Below are positions 206-11,526 of a stretch of 64,000 nucleotides of DNA, in pieces; positions within the stretch are counted from its first letter, which is position 1, and each line of letters starts with the position of its first letter. Both the position numbers and the translations under genes were made by a program. The notes under the pieces are model-generated. The model was not told where the DNA came from. It was given only the letters and a program-made list of their open reading frames with translations, and did not search any database. The DNA is from Stylophora pistillata (taxonomy: Eukaryota): the NCBI RefSeq assembly GCF_002571385.2, contig NW_019218131.1, positions 111,159-175,158 of the forward strand, written 5' to 3'.

Positions 206-1128
206 GAAATGTGTCCTAGAGGAGAAATTTAAGCAAACCAGTTTTCAAAAGTTCAAATGCCCGCGAGAGGGGGATGTTGAAGCTTTTAATTGATGGACGC
301 ATTAATCATCTTAATTAAGTTAAAGAATAAATTGGAGTTAAAGTTATCGTTCTTCAAAGAATTATTTCCACTAGCTTTTTAGCTCTGAAAACAGCTTTCA
401 TCTAACTGTCTCCTTGGTTCAATTTTAGCTAAATAAGGCGCTGATTAGGAAACCCGACAGATTTCTTGGTTACATGTTTTTGTTTGGTTTCGTGGACCTG
501 ATTATTCAGGACACAACGTTTAATAGCATTCCAAGAACGAACAACTTGCCCCCTGAGGGAACTGGCACTAGGTTGAGCAATCCCAATGTCTATTCGGATA
601 CCAGTACTAGCGAAGTCTCGTATCGTGGAACCATACGACCCACAAAAACTTAAATCCCCTTAAGAACAAAAAGAAAAAAACTAATGCACCGACAAGGAGC
701 TCTCCAACAAAAAACCCGCAGCACCTTTTTATCTTTAAATCCAGTAGTGATGAACATGAAACTTCTCCCTACGATATACTTACATTATCCAATAAACCGG
801 TGATGAGAATTACTGAAACTATCACGTAGAAGTTGGTATCTTGATCTAACACCAAATTCTTGTAACTGATTTACCAAGAAACGTGTAGCAGCTAGAGGGG
901 AGAACTAACAATCAAATCTTGGTAGTTTAGGGTGAACAGGTCTTCCCTTCCAGTCATCCCTACTACCATCGATCTCAGTAAAGCGAGAGTACGAAAAAAT
1001 ATCAATGTAGTGGTTATCCTGGGCTAGGAGAAAAAAAATCATACAACTATATCCTCATCGCAGTCGCTCGCAAATGATCGCTTCCTTAAATAGCTTTATC
1101 AATAACTTTATCCTACCATAAAATTTTC

Positions 1129-1200
1129 TAACCAGGTAATATCGATTAACCAGGTAATATCGATTAACCAGGTAATATCGATTAACCAGGTAATATCGAT
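1129..1200. repeat. 18-bp tandem repeat x4 (TAACCAGGTAATATCGAT)
   Basis: Four exact consecutive copies, about 660 bp downstream of the IRS stop codon. Confidence 0.95.
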
Positions 1201-1862
1201 TGGCCAACCATACGAGGAGCAACCCTTGGCCAATTCTCGTCAAGCAACACGATTGTTTTCGGATCCCCCTTCGACCAATTGAGAATAATCCGAGCAATCG
1301 CCGAACACGATCTCGTTCAAGCAGACTTGGAAAAGTTTCACGAGATCTTTAACAAAATGATAAATTCGCCGTAACATTTACCAGCAAATATACAAATCGG
1401 CACGTGCAACATCGCCTTTGACATAACTAGGTACTAAAAATTTTCAATGAAATTTCTTCTATGCTATCGATTTTCAGTCAGCCCTCTGTCAAAAGAAGTG
1501 CTACAGGCTTAACTTTGTACACCTCAGATCCTCTCTGTAACTAACCAAGACCTACTGAAATATTTGTTTAAAGTAGAGAAGAATTTTCATTTTTCGCCCC
1601 GAAGTTTCCACAATGATCAGCCACGAGATATCACGTCTTAATTGGGAATTTTTTTTTTTTTAGGGAAATAGCTACCTTGGACAATCTCACAATTGTGAAG
1701 TTCTATGTGCTCATCCAAACATGAATTCTCTCATGTATTTCCCTGCGTTTCTGTGATCTGGCAGTTTATAGCGATCCATCTAAAATAGGCATGTCACATC
1801 GCCGGCTCACCAAATAGATTGAACAACGAAGTACCAGCTTTCCACCGCTTCTCGCTGTCTAC

Positions 1863-3125
1863 TTAGTTGAAAACAAGAGTATTGGCTGATTCCCTTCTCT
1901 CCTGCCTGGCTTGCCTTATTCCATCAGATTTAGTGAAGTCCACCTCAGCGTACGCACTCCTGACGGGAGCAGATTTCGGCCCCGGAGACCCACGCCGACA
2001 CGAGGTTAAGTCTATGTTCGCAGGTCGTCGGCGCTGACGACTTGGAGACTCCGAAGAGTTCTCGGAATTGCTTAAGTCGAGCATGACGTAATTGAGCTGT
2101 TTGATCTCCTCATCTTCTTGAGTTGTGGTCAGTGGAGCGTTAGTCACAAGCTTTGGCGTCTGTAATCTAGCTGGTTCGCTATCTCTTCTGTTAGCATGAG
2201 GTGATTTTCTCCATCTTTGCCCTTCAACTTGAGGCTTTTCAGGAGAAAACTCGACATTGTCAAGAGCCTTAACTAAGCCGGTGTCTCGATCGTCATTGAC
2301 TAAGAAAACATCATTCTTGCTACTTTCGCAGATCTCCCCAGGAAAAAAATTTACGTACTCGGGCACATCTACTGCGCTCTTGCTTTTTGTAATACCGCTG
2401 AAATCAATGTTTTCGTACGCACGAGGTTTGTCTAATAGGTCGGACTCCAGGCTATGCTTTCTAAAACTGTTGTTCGAGTTTTTCTCATCAATGATCTTTC
2501 CAGGACTATAGTTCACATAACTATGCATATCTTCGTTAGAAGATGAGTCTTCTGAGTTGTTGACACGTTTAAGTAAACTCGGAATTTCAAGAAATTTCCC
2601 CCTGTTTGAAGAATCTGCCCCAGGGGTAAAGTTCACGTAATAACCGTTCGAGTCCTCTTTACGATGTCTCGCATCGGGGTTCGGAGATCGCGATCTCGGA
2701 GAATTCGCCCCGGGTAAAACATTTACATAACTAGGAGATCCGCCTGAGTCTACAGCGAGGGGACACATTGAAACATAATCCTGGCTTGATCTTCTTCGGC
2801 AAGAAGATGGAGACGTTTTGATAGAAACAAATTCACGAATGTCTGGTTTGTTAGGTAACGCACTTTCTGTAGTCCTCAGTTGCCTAGGAGACGACGATTT
2901 TGACTGCTGTACATACCCAGTCCGCGGGCTCGAACTTGGATTCTTCGCAGTTCCATTTTGTTTGTCACTGTGTTGTTTTTGTAGTGACGTCATGTCCATG
3001 TAGCCCCCATTGGGGACTGCGTGCGTCGTTTTTGTGTTCGACTGTTCATTGTCGACGATCGTAAATGCTTTGACAGCCTTGGACTTGCTTGCCTCCATAT
3101 CCACTTAGGAGTCACTGTTTTTGCG
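1863..3125 (-). CDS. IRS: IRS last exon (signalling tail with PI3K YxxM, Grb2 YxN and SHP2-type motifs)
   Basis: Acceptor TATTTTTCCAG at 3126; begins CGC AAA AAC AGT GAC TCC TAA GTG GAT ATG and then continues as the 413-aa ORF to TAA at 1863. Confidence 0.85.
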
Positions 3126-6100
3126 CTGGAAAAATACCATAACATTTTGACAACGATTATCCTCTCCCCCCTCACGGCTGTACTAAAATTTGACATCCCC
3201 CCCTTCCACCGACCTTCAACAACAACCTCGTCTGCGTTCAATTGTGAGTTCCCAGCTACGAATACAAGAACAACTGAACAATGGAACAACGGAATCACGG
3301 GACAACAGAGGATATACCCACATGAGGTACTGCAGTGACAAGCTTAGTTACCTCTGAGGCAAAAGAAAACCTTCATCCTATTGATAAACACGTTTACACA
3401 GGCTACCTTTGTTTCTATCTGTACTTTGTTACATGCAGAGAAGACAAAGATCCCTCTTGGTTTAGCTCATAAACTTCTTACTGTCTTAGAGGTCAGCTAA
3501 ATAAATCACATCTTTTGGACCGAAATATACCGAGCGTCCCCCACCCTCCCCTCCCAGGTGTTGAGTTGACGAGAAAAACGATCAAAGAAACCCATAAGAC
3601 AACAAAGCTTCTGAGCTAAATAATTTTTTACTTACAATTCCAGTTTCTCCATCCATCGCCATGTAATCCTCCATACTCGATGTTTCTCCGACAGTCTTCG
3701 ATCCAAGATTCATGTACACTGTTCAAAATTAAATCACGATTTGTACCGTATTTCTAAGAAAAATATCTGAACGAGTTTCAAAAACAAATCCCTATGAATA
3801 TCAAATCGTCCAACATCTCATTCCCCGTTCAAAAGCCATTGGTCCACTCCCTTGGTTTAAAGTTTTTGAATAGTGTTACTTCCTGGCAAAAACGGTTTAA
3901 GAATTATTGTCGCAACTGAAATTATCAACAGTTAAGGAATGTGTTTGCTAATAAGGATGTAATTTTGCCTGGCAAATGACTAAGTAAATCGATCTCATCA
4001 ACCAAAGGCGCCACGGGTAAACCACTTTGACCGTCCGTAAATTGTAGGGGTAAACATCTCTTTCTCCAAGGCTGGTTTCTCGCGTGATGATTGCGAGAGA
4101 CGAGTTCTTCCACCCACGCAAGAGCACGCACGACCATGGTGCGATGCGCACCTCGAGTGCGCATTGGCAATAGCAGGCACCCGCCTTAAAGATTCAATGA
4201 GAACTCTGGTAAAAACAACCAAACTGCTTAAAGCGCGAAAAAAGGCGAGCGACCAAGTCATGATTGGTTTTGGTTTTGCACCTGATTGGTTGAGTGGCGA
4301 GAGTTTTTCTGCAAAGCAAAACCACGCCATGAATTTTTTTTCTTACCCAGTTGGTCCTCTTTCTGTTCTACAGGTTTTGACGGAGGCTGCATCAATACTT
4401 TATCACCAAAGCCTGAATCTTTTTCTTCTCGGTTCTTGACTGGACTTTCCAAGCTCGTATTCAAGCCTAATGCAGAGGATATAAGTAAAAAAGATCATTT
4501 TTAAATACGTTTAACAGATTTTAGCTGGGACTCAGTGAAGTTTCCCAGAACAACAGAATGTAATAAAAGATTTCCATAGCGCCATATCCATTAGCCCCTG
4601 GCGCTTTACAACAGTTTGCGGAGCACTTTGGCCAAACTGCATGGAGTATATTACAATAACAAGTCCTAAGGGACATGCGCAGAAGACCCGGGTCTCTAGG
4701 GTACAGATAACTTTATAATAAAAAATGAATCCAATGCTCCAATGCTTCAGTTTTATTCTTTGTCCTGAGCTAGCGACAAAACAGATAAAATCTCTCCTTA
4801 TTTGAAGAACACGCATAGAGTCTAGTGGTAAAAAAGGATTTGTTCATAAACCACTCGTTTTCCCGCCCTTTTTGTGGTTTTGCCGCTAAGGACCGCGGGC
4901 TTCGGTACTCTTTTTTCACCAGAAGCGGCCATCTTGGTTTTGTTATGTTTTGAGCTCGAAATAAATTATTTTACTTGACGACCTATTCCTGGTAATTCAA
5001 CTGTTCTGGTATCGAAAACATCAAGTATCTCTCTTATTCCATTCACACAATGTTTTAAGAACAATCTGACATTGCTTGCGAATTTTAAGCTACTTTTCTA
5101 AATCAGATCATTTTGATGTAGGGCATACTTGAGCACCTATTACAGGTAGAGTTGTCAACTCCTCTGCCACAATTAGGGGAAATTAGGAATAAAAATATAT
5201 TTACTCATATCAGATAGGTGAATTCAGTGACAGAATAATTATGAATAGCTTGCGAGCAACCTTCAATTATTATTAGGCTTGCAGCACAGTCGTTTCTCCG
5301 CTCGTGAGAAGATTTTGAGACGAGTCTGGCACTAGTGCCACGCCCCCTGCAGACCTCTAGCCGGTTCGCTTAGCTCGAGGCCTCCTAATTTCCCGTTAGT
5401 AAAGAAACTCTCGTGCCGAAGCGCTGATAATGAGTGCCTGCTTGCGGGCTCAGCGATAAAAGACGCAACTACCTTCCTTTGATTTTCTCCGCGACCGCAA
5501 GCGATTTAACACAGATGGTGTTTTGTTCTTGGGACTTTCAAACTCTGATAAGTTCCGAGTAGAAACTGAGGAACTTATGGTACGAACCAACGGATTAGGA
5601 GAAGTAGGATCGGTGTCTGACCGACCACGACCGGGTGGATATATCATGGCGGACACTGGACGAGGGCGAGTCTTTTTTTTCCCTTCACTTTCACAACGTC
5701 GCCTTGTAATTGGTGGGAGATCAGACGAGGAGATGTTGTGCATCGCGCTGTAAATAATTAAAAGATACAAGGTTAGTGAAATATTACAAGAATTAAGGTT
5801 TTTTACAGGGATCCAAGGTCAAAATTTTCAACCTTTTTTTTTTTTTTCATCTTTGCTGCAGATTTTAGTCTCCAAAACTCGTTCCTTCGCGCCATGGTGA
5901 CCAAAATGGTTACAGCTTAGAGAGGTGGTTCAAAATCACGTGGGTAAAGTTTCACTCCCAAGATCTCATGAGTAATTCTGATTTCTATCTGCCATACAAT
6001 TCTTATGATGTTAGTTTGGAGAATTTGGCATTGGATCGACTTTTACTGGTTATCCCCTAACTGATATATTTTTTCTTCTCACCACTCGTCTGCTTTATAT

Positions 6101-6804
6101 TGTATTGACACTGTGAGGATAAATTCTGTCTTGGTCATCATAGGGAGTTAAAAAGGTTAAGGTAAAACAAATCCAATGAGACTTCAATAAAGTTTGTGTT
6201 CCCTGAGGGAACGAGGAGGATTCCCTGTTCCACAGTTGTGTAGGCCATCACAGTTTACTCTTAGCATTTCATCAGATTTCACTGACAGTTTGCCCACCCA
6301 AAGTAACATGTTTATACCTAGGTGGGCACGGGGGAGGAACTGGTGGAATGTTTTAGGACAGTTCATAGTTTAAATGGTCTAAATCCATCTTTGTTTACTT
6401 ATGCTAGTGCCTTTCGTCCTCTCCGCTCTAATAGTTGTTATAAATTGAAAGTCAAATCAGCTAGATTAAATTGTTACAAGTACTCACTCTTTGTCAGAAT
6501 CGTAACCCTGTGGAATAAATTACCTTAAGACGTAGCTGAAGCAGAATCTCTATGAACATTTAAGACCAAAGTCAAGAATTACCTTTTTAAATAATATTGT
6601 AAATAGTTTTTATAGTAGGAGTGTATATAGTTAAATCGCAACTTAATGTTCTTACATTTGTACATTCAAATAGATGTTTAACTAGATAATTATTTTGGAA
6701 ACACCCTCCATAGGGCTAACCTCTGGTGTCTCCCTTTCTTTCAAATTATTTATTTTTTGCGATTTGATTGAATAAAGTATTATTATTATTAATTATTATT
6801 ATTA

Positions 6805-6874
<70 letters not shown>

Positions 6875-9800
6875 GTATTTCTATCCCCCTCCCCCTTTGA
6901 ATGGAATGGCAGTCCATTGTGAGGTTACCTCCCCTCCCCCAGGCTACCTCCCCTTCCACTGTCTCTCCTGGGCGGAGAGAGGCACTGTGAGAGAAAAGTA
7001 TTTTTCACGAAAAACAGAACACAAGGACCTGACCAGGTCTCTGACTGAGATCTCCCAATTTGGAGTCTAGCATTCTCGCTGCTTGGCCACCATGTCTCCC
7101 CAATTATCCAGGGAACTGTTTAAATACTAATGAACATAATTTACCTCAGTATAGCTTCATGCATGTTCTGTGCAATGATTTGATCATCGACCTGAATCCA
7201 TAGCTCGCCAGCACCAGTGGCTGCGGACCTCCCAAGCTCCATGAAGAAAAAACAGTCTGTGTGGCCACAGCGTCTTATATTGACCAGCTGCAGCTCTGTG
7301 GCTGGTTCTTTGGTATCCTTTTTAACCAATGCTAGGTTGCGAGTGGACAACTGAAGGTCAAACTGACCAGCCAGGTTCCTGCTAGTTCCCAATCCCCTTG
7401 GTTTCACAGCAACAGGCCAGGTTGAGACTATCAGGAAAGAAAGATTAAGAAAAGTAAAGGGGTCATCCAGATGTCACTTGTGAGAGTACAGTCCTACATA
7501 GATTGCTCATGTATACCAGCAAATGGTTGGGATTATTCATTACGAATTTGCTGGTTTTGATGGGAAGGGAGGGGGATCTGCAATGGTCAAGTATTCCTTC
7601 AGGAGAAAAGGCAGTACAATAACTTTTTATATCACAAAAACTTTCATAAGATCTGGCATTTTGACCCCCAAGCAGGGCTCGACACTAACTTTTCAACTTA
7701 CTAGCCAAGTGGTTGGTGACCATCTTAGATGTTATGACAATTTCAGTTTGTTTACTAGCCAAATTGGCTGGTGGAAATCAAAAACCACTGGCCAAAACTG
7801 AAATTCTTCTAGTATGTGTCTAGTGGGCTTCTGTTAGGGTTGAGTCCTGCCTAAGAGTGACCAGCATCTAATTTCTCCTTACAATATCACCCCTGAATTA
7901 AACATTAAGGTTAAAGAAGCTCTCCTTGTCAGCATTATAAGTGTAGCACATGTATAGAGAACAGTATGGAGAATATGCATACTGATGTTAGTGTGTAAAG
8001 GGTTAACTCACTCACACAGTCTGTATCCATTCTAATGAAGGGCAGATGTTGAAAGGTGGAACCCTTTTTTTAATCAATATTTATCCTCAGGGTTGAAGAG
8101 CAGTGCTGTGTGAGACAAGACAGGGCTCAACACTTATGGTAGCCAGCTAGCCACAGACTAGTAGAAATTCAGTTTTGGCTGGTGTTTTTCAATTCCCACT
8201 TGCCAGTTTGGCTAGTAAAATACCCACTTGGCTAGTAAGTTGAAAAGTCAGTGTTGAGCCCTGCAAGATGCTTGCGAAAAATGATAATTTCAGCTACAGA
8301 CTGGATCAGACCTTTGGAGTTTGAACTGGGTGTGACATCCACTGGATAGCACATGACCACTGAAAGGCACTAGAATCATTTTTGATTCCTTACTAGTCTG
8401 AGGTTAAGCAGCCTGCTCAGCTGGAGCTGATCTTAAAGCCACTGGGAGCAATGCTGTTCTCTATGGCCAGCAGGATACAACATATAGAAAGATGTTCTTT
8501 GTCTAGTCATGGGCATGGGAGAAAGAAAAAATTCTGAAGCTTTGGACATTGCCGATCCTAACAGTATGCAGGACACGCGACAAATATGAACTTCCTCATG
8601 GGCCTTGCTGACCATAGAGTCTCTGCGGCTCAGCGGCAGAGCATCAGATTGTGGAATCCGAAGGTCTGGGGTTTGTTTCCTCCTGACGATTCGTATTTTT
8701 TCTTTGTGATTGTCCCACGTTCATGAGTAGATGAAAAACATCTTTCCATATTTCTTTACCGAGCTCAAATTCTTCACAAGGCTAAAACATGTTAACAATA
8801 ACTTAATTAACCCTTTCACTCACAGAAGTGATTAACCGAGAAATTCTCCAGATGACATTCATAAATTATTCAGCAAAATAGGTAATAAGAATATTCAAAC
8901 TTATCAGGTAGAAGTCGTCACCTTGATTTGACATCAAATTCTCCTAACTAATTTACAAGGAAATGTGTAGTAGCTAGAGGGGAGAATTCACAATTGGATC
9001 TTGAGAGTTACGGGGTTACCAGATCTACCAACTTCTGAAAATATTTCAAAACATCTCAATATACTTTGGGTTACGATTTTTTTCAATTTACTTTGGGTTA
9101 AGATTTAGCTGAATTAACAAGTGACCTGGAAAATTCACCATGAGAGTAGAGAGATTATGCCTGGATCAATTTCAAACTTCAATATCCCTTTCCCTCTGGA
9201 AAAATCTGCTGAAAAAACTTTGATCATGAAATCTGGCGTAAATGGGCAGGGAATTTGAACACAATTTTGGGCTCGAGGGGCAGGAATTTGAACAAACCAA
9301 TCCTCAAAAGTTCAAAAGCCCTGGGGGTTGACCATAAAGGATGTTGAAACTTTGAATACATGTGGATCAATGCATTGAATGCATCAATCAAACATCATAC
9401 CATGTTTTGCCTTACAACGTCTAATGAAAAAATTTATAGAAACTGGTTCAGTCTCTATGGTTTGCTGTAGAAGGTAATACCAAATCAATCATTCAGGGTT
9501 TTTTTTTACAAAGCTGTTGTACCAAGCTTGTTAGACCAAAATAAGATTTTTGAAAAATCCAGTTCTTTTTTTTTTTGTTGTTACCTTGACAGATGGTTTA
9601 CTACATAAATATCACTTTGCTTACATTTTACTGATTTGTGCCATTTTAAAGTAAAGAAACATAATTATGTTAAGAGTTGTCATGAAAACAAAAACAAAAA
9701 GGAGCTTTTTGTTAATTTTAATCTTACAAGTCAGCATGGAGCAGTCCTTGCTTCTTTTGAGGCAGTAAAATGGACATTTTGTGAGTTTTTTTTTTTTTTC

Positions 9801-11526
9801 TTGAAAATATAACAAACAATAAAACATCTGAATAGAAAAGATGTTGGCTTTCAGATAACCTACCAGATTGCTGGAAAAATGCCTCATTTCATGAAAAGAT
9901 TTTGCTCAAAATGCAGCTGAAGTCTAAACTACAGGAAACTGTTTAATTAGAATTTACTAATATATATTTTTCAAGGGAGGAGGAGGTGAAATGAAAGTAC
10001 ATTATTTCACGATAAATTTTTTACTTTATAATAATTTCAGTGAAAAGCTTTCCAAAATAATAACTTTACATTTTTAGAAAAATTGACACAAAAATCCTAA
10101 CCCCTCCCCAAGTGAAAAAATATTTCAACCCATCACCTGGTATGGGTCACAACGGGTTACAAACATGCAAGGATGCATGCAATTTCATAATAATTGCGAT
10201 TTCTAATTACACGCATGATTGTATGCTAGGTTGTTAGTAAAGTGAATCGCTCACCAGATGCATTAAGGATTTCATCTTTCCTCTTCTCGACGTTCAAAAT
10301 TTTCATCCAAGCGTTCAATTCGTCCTCTGATTCCGCAATCAAACCAAAAAAATAATCTCGCGTGTACAAAGCAAACACCAATTTGTGCTTCGAGTCCTCT
10401 TTCTTTGCGATGTTTAGGCAGCTTGCAAGGTAGATCACTCGCTTTGGTGGGCCTTTTGAGCGGAATTTTTTCTCGCTCTCGTAGTATTCCAGTCGAGATT
10501 TGCCTTTCCTTGGCGACGAACGAAGAACGAAAAATCGCTTTTTCAGCGTCTGTTGAATAATAACACACGATCTAGGTACTTTGTCACAAATACTTGTCAC
10601 GGATTTCTGAGCGCTGTTGTTGCTGTGTACATTTCCTGAGCTGTAAAATTACGACCTCAAAAAAAATTTTTTTTACAAACTCGAGAAAGAAAAAAATTAT
10701 AACATGCAAAAATAATCAGCAACACCAATCAACAAAGCACAGATTTGCATTCGCATCTGCGCGTTTAATTTCAGTACAAAGCAAAATGACATTGTCTTTC
10801 AATTTTGTTCACATGAGCACTTGAATTTGCAATAAAAACAATGAGTAAGTTTATCAAGTTCTAGGTCCCGATCGTAATAAATAAATAGCAAAAAGATTTT
10901 CAAAAATGAAACATTGAAAGCCTGACGCAAAATTGTAAACGATTTAAACCCACACACAAAAGACAAAAGACAAGCTTTTTGGCTCACAAATCTACTTAAA
11001 GAGGACCTACATGCAGTGTAATTACCCCAGAACGAAACTCGTATATTAATACCTCAATTTATGCAGGGCTTTAAACAATCAAGGTTTTCCTTACAGATGT
11101 AGATAACGATGTATCAAAACAGCTTCACCATTATCAGCGGAAAATCGTTCTCGAGAACTCAAAATTCGTTCAGAATAAAAGCTTCTACGCCTAAACATGC
11201 TTGAGTTTATTGGGCAAGAGTGCAAATTAGACTGGACAAACAATTAAAAGCATTCAAGTCAAACTAACATGACAGACCCCTGGTTGAGCTTCACCACTGA
11301 TCGCAAGTTGCCGCAAAGAAACAACAAAAATACTAAATAACGGTTAAACATTTAGCGTTTACAGCTTACGAACGACGCAAACTTGAGCCAATATTTGTAA
11401 TTTACAACGAAAAGGAACTGCCGATCGAAGAATCAATTGCATAGACTAAGTGCGAACTTTTATCAAAGAGATCTTTACCTTGAGTCTTCGAAGATGCCCT
11501 TCTTTTACAATATCTCCATCGTCCAT
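1863..11526 (-). CDS. IRS: Insulin receptor substrate (IRS1/2/chico-like): PH + IRS-type PTB + Tyr-motif tail; contains an in-frame TAA at 3105-3107
   Basis: Phase-consistent GT-AG exons: 11526-11479 (MDDGDIVKEGHLRRLK; alternative in-frame ATG at 11550), 10549-10255 (TLKKRFFVLR..RLEYYESEKKF, PH), 7427-7145 (IRRCGHTDCFFFMELGRSAATGAGELW, PTB), 5747-5473, 4466-4347, 3718-3636 (YMNL, YMAM), 3125-1863 (YMDM, YVSM, several YVN/YEN, LNYVML, AYAEV). 374 aa to the internal TAA, 788 aa if read through. Confidence 0.92.
6340..6871 (+). mobile_element. 5'-truncated CR1/L2-type LINE 3' end with AATAAA and (ATT)n tail
   Basis: ECFRTVHSLNGL...YKLKVKSARLNCYKYSLFVRIVTLWNKLP resembles the C-terminus of CR1/L2 ORF2 (SF..R....WN.LP); followed by a UTR, AATAAA (6771) and an ATT microsatellite tail. 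Confidence 0.75.
6778..6871. repeat. (ATT)n microsatellite
   Basis: About 30 nearly perfect ATT units. Confidence 0.95.
7145..7427 (-). CDS. IRS: IRS PTB-domain exon
   Basis: WPVAVKPRGLG...LQLVNIRRCGHTDCFFFMELGRSAATGAGELWIQVDDQIIAQNMHEAIL, closely matching the IRS PTB consensus; AG/GT boundaries. Confidence 0.95.
8121..8263. mobile_element. MITE with CAGGGCTC(AA)...(TT)GAGCCCTG terminal inverted repeats (hAT-like); related copies near 7673-7850, 39314-39490, 50033-50507
   Basis: Inverted termini CAGGGCTCAACACT / AGTGTTGAGCCCTG and shared internal ACTAGCCA motifs across copies. Confidence 0.7.
8807..9019. mobile_element. Abundant ~200-bp MITE family with TTAACCC(TTT)...(AAA)GGGTTAA ends (piggyBac-like non-autonomous); related copies near 730-935, 5950-6160, 7850-8006, 16850-17000, 26930-27055, 30365-31445, 34410-34630, 44127-44280, 48385-48600
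   Basis: Recurrent shared sequence (…ATCAGGTAGAAGTTGTTATCTTGATCTAACACCAAATTCTC…AGGGGAGAAT… and …CATCTAATTTCTCCTTACAATATCACCCCTGAAT…GAATATGCATACTGATGTTAG…) bounded by TTAA-CCC inverted ends. Confidence 0.7.
10255..10549 (-). CDS. IRS: IRS PH-domain exon
   Basis: KKRFFVLR, RLEYYESEKKF, PKRVI.L..C.NI.K..DSKHK...ALYTRD..F...AESE.E...W; AG/GT boundaries. Confidence 0.95.

What the first reader, a model, noticed from the sequence alone, without database searches (positions are those of the whole stretch)
3096..3127. IRS: an in-frame TAA sits exactly at the Tyr of a YxxM PI3K motif and gates the whole 413-aa signalling tail
Seen: exon 6 ends in phase 0 (ATT|GTAAGT, 3636). The strong acceptor TTTTTCCAG at 3126 gives R-K-N-S-D-S-*-V-D-M-E..., and the frame then stays open for 413 codons packed with YMDM, YVSM, five YxN and two SHP2-type motifs. 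Established: YxxM is the p85 SH2 docking motif, Tyr is among the residues inserted at UAA during readthrough, and TAA is one base from TAC/TAT. Inference: either regulated readthrough that switches between a 374-aa PH-PTB short form and a 788-aa full adaptor while creating YVDM, or a nonsense allele or base error. A third route also keeps frame: exon 5 (phase 1) spliced to the AG inside TCCTAAG|TG (exon start 3103), skipping exon 6. The +4 G context is not a known leaky one.
Basis: partly seen in the sequence, partly recalled or inferred. Interest (0 to 1): 0.8.

Follow-up and report, generated by a model that had tools for sequence, protein, structure and literature searches.

The report
Assembly-only stop codon in coral IRS
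The stop codon that seems to cut a coral insulin-receptor-substrate gene in two is found only in the reference assembly; every other colony, transcript and related coral checked has an ordinary tyrosine codon there, so this is a reference error or private allele, not a readthrough switch.

Summary
On the minus strand, exon 6 ends in phase 0 at 3636. The acceptor AG at 3127-3126 opens the last exon. Its seventh codon is TAA (3107-3105), followed by 413 open codons rich in pTyr motifs.

- In four runs of this species (Stylophora pistillata) from four studies, the reference base at 3105 is never seen. The probable 2016 source library contig has TAT, a 2024 run and a 2021 poly-A RNA contig have TAC, and raw RNA reads give 4 TAC and 1 TAT of 5.
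- Three further conspecific contigs have TAC.
- All twelve related-coral sequences that cover the site have Tyr (S-Y-[VIM]-[DE]-M).
- Transcripts join exon 5, exon 6 and the 3125 start exactly. No bypass joint was seen.

All four reference-private bases in this exon sit on sites where other colonies carry two other alleles (P about 5e-7). That points to a consensus error at heterozygous sites (about 0.7) rather than a real private nonsense allele (about 0.25).

Both public gene models are distorted by it: RefSeq stops at 382 aa, and GenBank skips 11 codons. The true product is an ordinary IRS of about 796 aa with an intact YVDM.

The parts
3105..3107 (-). In-frame TAA of the reference. In all other samples this codon is Tyr (TAC, less often TAT), the Tyr of a conserved S-Y-V-D-M motif.
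   Evidence: for the window; at + strand 3105 the reference T is seen in no run (X3 = A, X1 = G, X10 = G, X22 raw reads 4 G + 1 A of 5). L001, L007 and L008 read TAC.
3126..3127 (-). Acceptor AG of the last intron. This is the one actually used.
   Evidence: Spliced contigs L001 and L008 and the X10 contig all start the last exon at 3125. The position is conserved in two other genera (L003, L004).
1863..3125 (-). Last coding exon (exon 7), with the final stop at 1865-1863. It encodes the Tyr-motif tail.
671..1862 (-). 3' UTR, at least as far as 671. It includes an 18-nt tandem repeat at 1129-1201.
   Evidence: L001 aligns down to 671. Tandem repeat.
3636..3718 (-). Exon 6 (V-Y-M-N-L ... Y-M-A-M ... 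G-E-T-G-I). It ends in phase 0.
   Evidence: The X10 contig covers 3642-3719.
4347..4466 (-). Exon 5. It ends in phase 1.
5473..5747 (-). Exon 4 (Ser/Arg-rich linker).
7145..7427 (-). Exon 3: IRS-type PTB domain.
   Evidence: PF02174, E 1.3e-17. Mapping.
10255..10549 (-). Exon 2: PH domain.
   Evidence: PF00169, E 3.7e-10. Mapping.
11479..11550 (-). First coding exon of the RefSeq model (Met at 11550).
   Evidence: Exact match to residues 1-24 of XP_022799973.1 (P0073).
3093..3094 (-). Cryptic AG used by the GenBank model PFX19694.1 to skip the stop (exon start 3092). No transcript supports it.
   Evidence: P0074 reads ...GETGI|ASKSK. AG list. No such joint, and the transcripts carry the 11 skipped codons.
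3104..3105 (-). It exists only in the reference because its A is the aberrant base.

Best explanation
The gene is the ordinary single-copy insulin-receptor-substrate (IRS) orthologue of Stylophora pistillata. It has seven coding exons on the minus strand: PH domain, IRS-type PTB domain, and a long disordered tail of YxxM and YxN docking motifs. In the species, codon 7 of the last exon is Tyr. TAC is the common and ancestral allele, and TAT is a minor synonymous allele. The mRNA therefore encodes one continuous protein of about 796 aa containing S-Y-V-D-M. The A that turns this codon into TAA is present only in the reference assembly. It is most likely a consensus miscall made at a heterozygous C/T site of the sequenced colony. 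Nothing is gated, no readthrough is needed, and the 382-aa short form is an annotation consequence of one wrong base. Shown: the reference base is absent from all other data, Tyr is conserved, and the splice pattern is as described. Inferred: the base is an assembly error rather than a rare real allele, and the step of the assembly pipeline that produced it.
For: + strand 3105: the reference T is in none of four runs from four studies. X3 is one of four 2016 DNA runs from one sample, which matches the four paired-end libraries described in PMC5730576; its contig has A, giving TAT. X1 (2024) has G, giving TAC. The X10 poly-A RNA contig has TAC. X22 raw stranded RNA reads give 4 TAC and 1 TAT of 5.
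conspecific contigs L001 and L008 (spliced transcripts) and L007 (genomic, metagenome) all read TAC.
twelve related-coral sequences that cover the site all have Tyr. They include Oculina patagonica P0033, the 816-aa sister-species transcripts (L005/L006, TAC), and genomic loci L003 and L004 of two other genera (TAC).
the exon 5-6-7 joints sit exactly at 4347/3718 and at the 3125 start.
after nine samples, the only reference-private bases in 1800-3125 are 2066, 2103, 2258 and 3105. All four lie on sites where the other samples carry two other alleles (36 such sites in 1326 nt; hypergeometric P = 4.6e-7). Introns 5 and 6 show two more such sites (4003, 4089).
One of these four bases (2258) turns a second conserved Tyr (D-Y-V-x-F) into Asn in the reference alone. 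Losing conserved residues this way is what unselected errors would do.
two other first-stage notes report in-frame stops in otherwise intact frames of this same genome. These are unchecked leads.
Against: The run contigs keep one allele per bubble, so the X3 contig (TAT) cannot show that the source colony lacks a TAA haplotype. I could not see the raw reads of the source libraries. X3 being the source colony is inferred from date, sample structure and the paper, and is not stated by the tool. I have no demonstrated mechanism by which the pipeline (ALLPATHS-LG with HAPLOIDIFY, then SSPACE and GapFiller) writes a third base at a heterozygous SNP. At other heterozygous-looking sites (for example 2181, 2551, 2800) the reference carries a real allele.
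Confidence: 0.7

Rival explanations
1. The TAA is a real but private nonsense allele, germline heterozygous or clonal somatic, in the sequenced colony. One haplotype would encode a 382-aa PH-PTB protein without the docking tail. The stop lies in the last exon, so the mRNA would escape nonsense-mediated decay. The other haplotype would encode the normal protein.
For: The TAA stands in the public assembly, and both public annotations had to work around it. The run contigs drop minor alleles, so absence from the X3 contig is not proof. Corals are highly heterozygous (17 differences in 2.5 kb between the reference and the X3 contig). At several other sites the reference allele is a real allele shared with other colonies (2402, 2800, 2883/2884).
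Against: The allele is seen in none of at least seven other data sets. It would require the reference haplotype to carry private third alleles precisely at sites that are already biallelic in the population (P about 5e-7 by chance), including two hits on conserved Tyr codons. The probable source library contig carries TAT, not TAA.
Confidence: 0.25
2. Programmed, regulated stop-codon readthrough: UAA is decoded as Tyr, Gln or Lys. This would switch between a PH-PTB short form and the full adaptor and create YVDM only on readthrough.
For: Only the reference sequence itself: a stop at the Tyr position of a YxxM motif with 413 conserved open codons behind it.
Against: The stop is not conserved. 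There are 0 stops in twelve related-coral sequences and 0 in conspecific DNA and RNA, so the downstream conservation is that of an ordinary ORF. UAA followed by G is not a known leaky context (established knowledge). No unusual RNA structure follows the stop (z = -0.9).
Confidence: 0.01
3. The stop is removed by splicing, either exon 5 to the AG at 3105-3104 (skipping exon 6) or exon 6 to the cryptic AG at 3094-3093, as in GenBank model PFX19694.1.
For: Both routes keep the frame. The GenBank 785-aa model uses the second route.
Against: All spliced contigs (L001, L008, X10, and L005/L006 of the sister species) use exon 6 and the 3125 start, and they contain the 11 codons that the GenBank model skips. 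No such joint appears, although raw-read depth was low (about 1-5x). The first AG does not exist in the TAC/TAT alleles.
Confidence: 0.02

Closest known systems
Insulin receptor substrate family (vertebrate IRS1/2/4, Drosophila chico; cnidarian 'insulin receptor substrate 1-B', e.g. Nematostella vectensis P0037)
   Same: N-terminal PH domain, then an IRS-type PTB domain (PF02174), then a long low-complexity tail with several YxxM and YxN motifs.
   Different: It is shorter (about 796 aa) than vertebrate IRS1/2 (over 1200 aa). The tail is alignable only within Scleractinia. No biochemical data exist for the coral protein.
Public models of this very gene: RefSeq XP_022799973.1/XP_022799974.1 (382 aa) and GenBank PFX19694.1 (785 aa)
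   Same: Same locus, with the same exons 1-6.
   Different: RefSeq ends at ...RKNSDS because of the TAA. GenBank jumps from ...GETGI to ASKSK through a cryptic AG and loses 11 codons, including the YVDM motif. Transcripts of other colonies support neither model.
Pocillopora damicornis IRS homologue pdam_00015468 (797 aa), listed in PMC10838073
   Same: A coral IRS-like protein of nearly the same length, recognised as an insulin-pathway component.
   Different: It comes from another genus, and I did not align it here.
Programmed stop-codon readthrough genes of animals (e.g. UGA-CUAG type)
   Same: An in-frame stop followed by conserved coding sequence, but in the reference only.
   Different: The stop is not conserved, is absent from the population, has no leaky context and has no downstream structure.

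Membership tests
IRS adaptor family | N-terminal pleckstrin-homology domain | tested here: met
   PF00169, E 3.7e-10, on exon 2.
IRS adaptor family | IRS-type PTB domain directly after the PH domain | tested here: met
   PF02174, E 1.3e-17, on exon 3. Full-length relatives carry PF00169 + PF02174.
IRS adaptor family | C-terminal tail with multiple YxxM (p85 SH2) and YxN (Grb2 SH2) motifs | tested here: met
   YMDM, YVSM and five YxN in the last exon; YMNL and YMAM in exon 6; plus YVDM in all non-reference sequences. The motifs are present; binding was not tested.
IRS adaptor family | Sequence homology to named IRS proteins | tested here: met
   Nematostella IRS1-B at E 1e-58 and vertebrate IRS1/IRS2 at E 1e-24 to 1e-26, with orthologue P0007 as query. 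Cluster members are named 'insulin receptor substrate 1-like' and 'Insulin receptor substrate 1-B'.
IRS adaptor family | Tyrosine phosphorylation by an insulin/IGF-type receptor kinase | not testable with these tools
   Needs biochemistry.
Programmed stop-codon readthrough | The stop codon is conserved in orthologues | tested here: not met
   Tyr in all twelve related-coral sequences covering the site. The codon is TAC in every one read as DNA.
Programmed stop-codon readthrough | The stop codon is present in the species' own DNA and mRNA | tested here: not met
   0 of 4 runs and 0 of 3 further conspecific contigs.
Programmed stop-codon readthrough | Leaky stop context or a stimulatory downstream RNA structure | tested here: not met
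   UAA-G context. The 126 nt around and after the stop fold no better than shuffles (z = -0.9).

The most novel reading that the evidence does not exclude
The TAA could be a real heterozygous nonsense allele of the sequenced Red Sea colony. That colony would then be a natural carrier of a tail-less PH-PTB IRS fragment that escapes NMD and might act as a dominant negative. Basal readthrough could restore a little full-length protein. The evidence does not exclude this, because the raw reads of the source libraries could not be inspected.
Probability: 0.22. Interest if true: 0.25.

Novelty: not a real feature. Interest (0 to 1): 0.12.

Why it matters
As biology it does not matter much. The coral IRS gene is conventional, and its PI3K-docking YVDM motif is intact in the species.

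It matters for practical use of the data.
- Both public protein models of this gene are wrong at this point. One is a 382-aa truncation. The other has an 11-codon skip that deletes a conserved YxxM motif. Either could mislead comparative work on insulin signalling in corals.
- The reference seems to carry third-allele bases at heterozygous sites. If that is general, it would produce false nonsense and missense calls elsewhere in this widely used assembly. Other in-frame stops flagged in this genome should therefore be checked against reads before any readthrough or pseudogene reading.

Tried and rejected
- Second copy or haplotig in the same assembly: none, a single 100% match.
- Downstream readthrough-stimulating RNA structure: none.
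- Transition/transversion bias of the reference-private bases as an error signature: it looked strong against the X3 contig alone. It weakened once each base was compared with the nearest real allele (about 5 transversions to 4 possible transitions), so I do not rely on it.
- CpG hypermutability as the cause of the three-allele sites: only 3105 and possibly 4003 are CpG sites, so I rejected it as a general cause.
- A deterministic mis-decoding rule for ambiguity codes (a 2-bit ASCII trick applied on the minus strand): it fits 5 of 6 sites. That is not significant (about 0.2), and the TAA is already in the public record, since the RefSeq and GenBank models both react to it. It was therefore not introduced by this scan.
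- Replicating the third-allele pattern on another gene of the window (the intronless Kelch gene at 25174-26883): only one other conspecific contig exists in the collection, too few to test.
- Pfam on the tail: no domain, as expected for a disordered tail.
- Earlier findings by words: no checked result, only two unchecked leads.
- Joined spliced model: I did not build, search or fold one. Exons were handled one by one or through public protein ids. The only joined letter was the single base completing the split codon at the start of exon 6, inside a script.

Full report
**What is there.**
The finding lies in the last exon of a minus-strand gene. Pfam finds a PH domain on the exon at 10255-10549 and an IRS-type PTB domain on the exon at 7145-7427. 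Exon-by-exon mapping of the public 382-aa protein gives seven coding exons:
- exon 1: 11550-11479
- exon 2: 10549-10255
- exon 3: 7427-7145
- exon 4: 5747-5473
- exon 5: 4466-4347
- exon 6: 3718-3636
- exon 7: 3125-1863

Exon 6 ends ATT|GTAAGT in phase 0. The acceptor AG is at 3127-3126. The exon opens R-K-N-S-D-S-stop-V-D-M-E, with TAA at 3107-3105 followed by G. After that, 413 codons are open. They carry YMDM, YVSM, five YxN motifs and one LNYVML motif.

**Identity.**
Cluster members name the organism and the gene: Stylophora pistillata, 'insulin receptor substrate 1-like isoform X2' (XP_022799973.1, 382 aa) and 'Insulin receptor substrate 1-B' (PFX19694.1, 785 aa). Full-length relatives with PH + PTB include Oculina patagonica (793 aa), unnamed coral transcripts of 773-816 aa, and Nematostella IRS1-B. 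A review already lists a 797-aa IRS-like protein in Pocillopora damicornis (PMC10838073). The gene is single copy in its 397.6-Mb assembly.

**Orthologues.**
Every related-coral sequence that reaches upstream of the site has Tyr.
- As protein, P0007, P0008, P0015, P0030, P0031, P0033, P0034, P0035 and P0036 read S-Y-[VIM]-[DE]-M.
- Genomic loci of two further genera (L003, L004) read TAC directly after a conserved acceptor.
- The sister-species transcripts L005 and L006 also read TAC.

The stop is therefore not conserved. The downstream conservation is that of a normal ORF.

**Conspecific data.**
L001 is a spliced contig 97-100% identical to the window. It aligns as 4516-4344 / 3719-3636 / 3125-671 and reads TAC where the window reads TAA. 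L008 (transcript) and L007 (genomic, from a metagenome) also read TAC.

Reads and contigs of four runs were laid on 1800-4600. At + strand 3105 the reference T occurs in none of them.

| Run | Type | Base(s) at + strand 3105 | Codon |
|---|---|---|---|
| X3 | DNA, 2016 | A | TAT |
| X1 | 2024 | G | TAC |
| X10 | poly-A RNA contig | G | TAC |
| X22 | raw stranded RNA reads | 4 G + 1 A of 5 | TAC / TAT |

X3 is one of four 2016 DNA runs of one sample. This matches the four paired-end libraries of the genome paper (PMC5730576), so X3 is probably the source colony.

The X10 contig carries the exon 5-6-7 joints, and X22 has one read across 3719/4350. No joint from 4347 to 3103 or from 3636 to 3092 was seen, although raw depth there was only about 1-5x. 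With C or T at that position it does not exist.

**Error or real allele.**
I combined with five conspecific contigs. In 1800-3125 the reference then carries a base seen in no other sample at only four sites: 2066, 2103, 2258 and 3105. At all four, the other samples carry two other alleles. X22 raw reads are heterozygous for those two alleles at each site.

Of the 1326 positions, 36 are polymorphic among the non-reference samples. Four of four falling on such sites has P = 4.6e-7. Introns 5 and 6 add two more such sites (4003, 4089).

Natural private variants should fall mostly on otherwise monomorphic sites, so this pattern suggests the assembly wrote a wrong letter where the sequenced colony is heterozygous. 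The base at 2258 also changes a second conserved Tyr (D-Y-V-x-F in relatives) to Asn in the reference only. The assembly used ALLPATHS-LG with HAPLOIDIFY=True, then L_RNA_scaffolder, SSPACE and three rounds of GapFiller. Which step produced such letters is my inference, not shown.

The caveat is that the run contigs keep one allele per bubble. A TAT/TAA heterozygous source colony is therefore not excluded. I put the error reading at about 0.7 and a real private nonsense allele at about 0.25.

If the allele is real, the stop lies in the last exon, 19-21 nt past the last junction. By established knowledge the mRNA would escape NMD and give a tail-less PH-PTB fragment.

**Readthrough.**
There is no support for readthrough. 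UAA-G is not a leaky context (established knowledge). The RNA after the stop folds no better than shuffles (z = -0.9). The stop is also absent from the species at large.

**Consequences for annotation.**
RefSeq ends the protein at ...RKNSDS (382 aa). GenBank splices from ...GETGI to ASKSK through the cryptic AG at 3094-3093, dropping 11 codons. Transcripts from other colonies read ...GETGIRKNSDSYVDMEASK.... From the RefSeq start, the real product is therefore 382 + 1 + 413 = 796 aa.

**Earlier notes.**
Two unchecked first-stage notes report in-frame stops in otherwise intact frames elsewhere in this genome. They fit a systematic substitution artefact and should be checked against reads first.

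**Limits.**
One read-laying run was allowed, so the raw reads of the source libraries were not inspected.

Noticed in passing
window 2066, 2103, 2258, 4003, 4089 (+ strand): Here too the reference carries a base seen in no other sample, while the other colonies carry two other alleles. 2258 turns a conserved Tyr (D-Y-V-x-F) into Asn in the reference only. This looks like a systematic consensus artefact at heterozygous sites of this assembly.
   Followed up: partly
window 3636-3641 (-): The poly-A transcript contig of run X10 joins 3642 directly to 3125, so it lacks GGAATT (Gly-Ile) at the end of exon 6. L001 and L008 have those six bases. This is either an in-frame 6-nt indel polymorphism or an unusual donor.
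   Followed up: no
window 4349 (-), last full codon of exon 5: A real Leu/Pro polymorphism (CTG in the reference and X3; CCG in X1, X10, L001 and L008). Pro is the state in related corals.
   Followed up: partly
window 1129-1201: A perfect 18-nt tandem repeat, 4.1 copies, in the 3' UTR. Transcript L001 lacks 36 nt (two units), so copy number is polymorphic. L009 lacks 16 nt at 1665-1680.
   Followed up: partly
window 4210-4294 (intron between exons 5 and 6): A very high-copy dispersed repeat. Summed contig depth is 900 to 10,900, against 19 to 129 beside it. RNA reads lie on both strands, with many loose ends into other copies.
   Followed up: no
window 25174-26883 (+): An intronless BTB-BACK-Kelch gene, annotated PFX19680.1 'Kelch-like protein diablo'. 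An ORF at 52946-53896 (+) encodes a pyridine nucleotide-disulphide oxidoreductase domain.
   Followed up: partly
window 18380; 32636-32650: A single N and a run of 15 N inside otherwise continuous sequence. A lone N would fit an ambiguity left unresolved by the assembler. I left both untouched.
   Followed up: no
same genome, other windows (notes s1-773132, s1-771610): Other first-stage notes report in-frame stops in otherwise intact reading frames. They may be the same kind of reference-only base.
   Followed up: no
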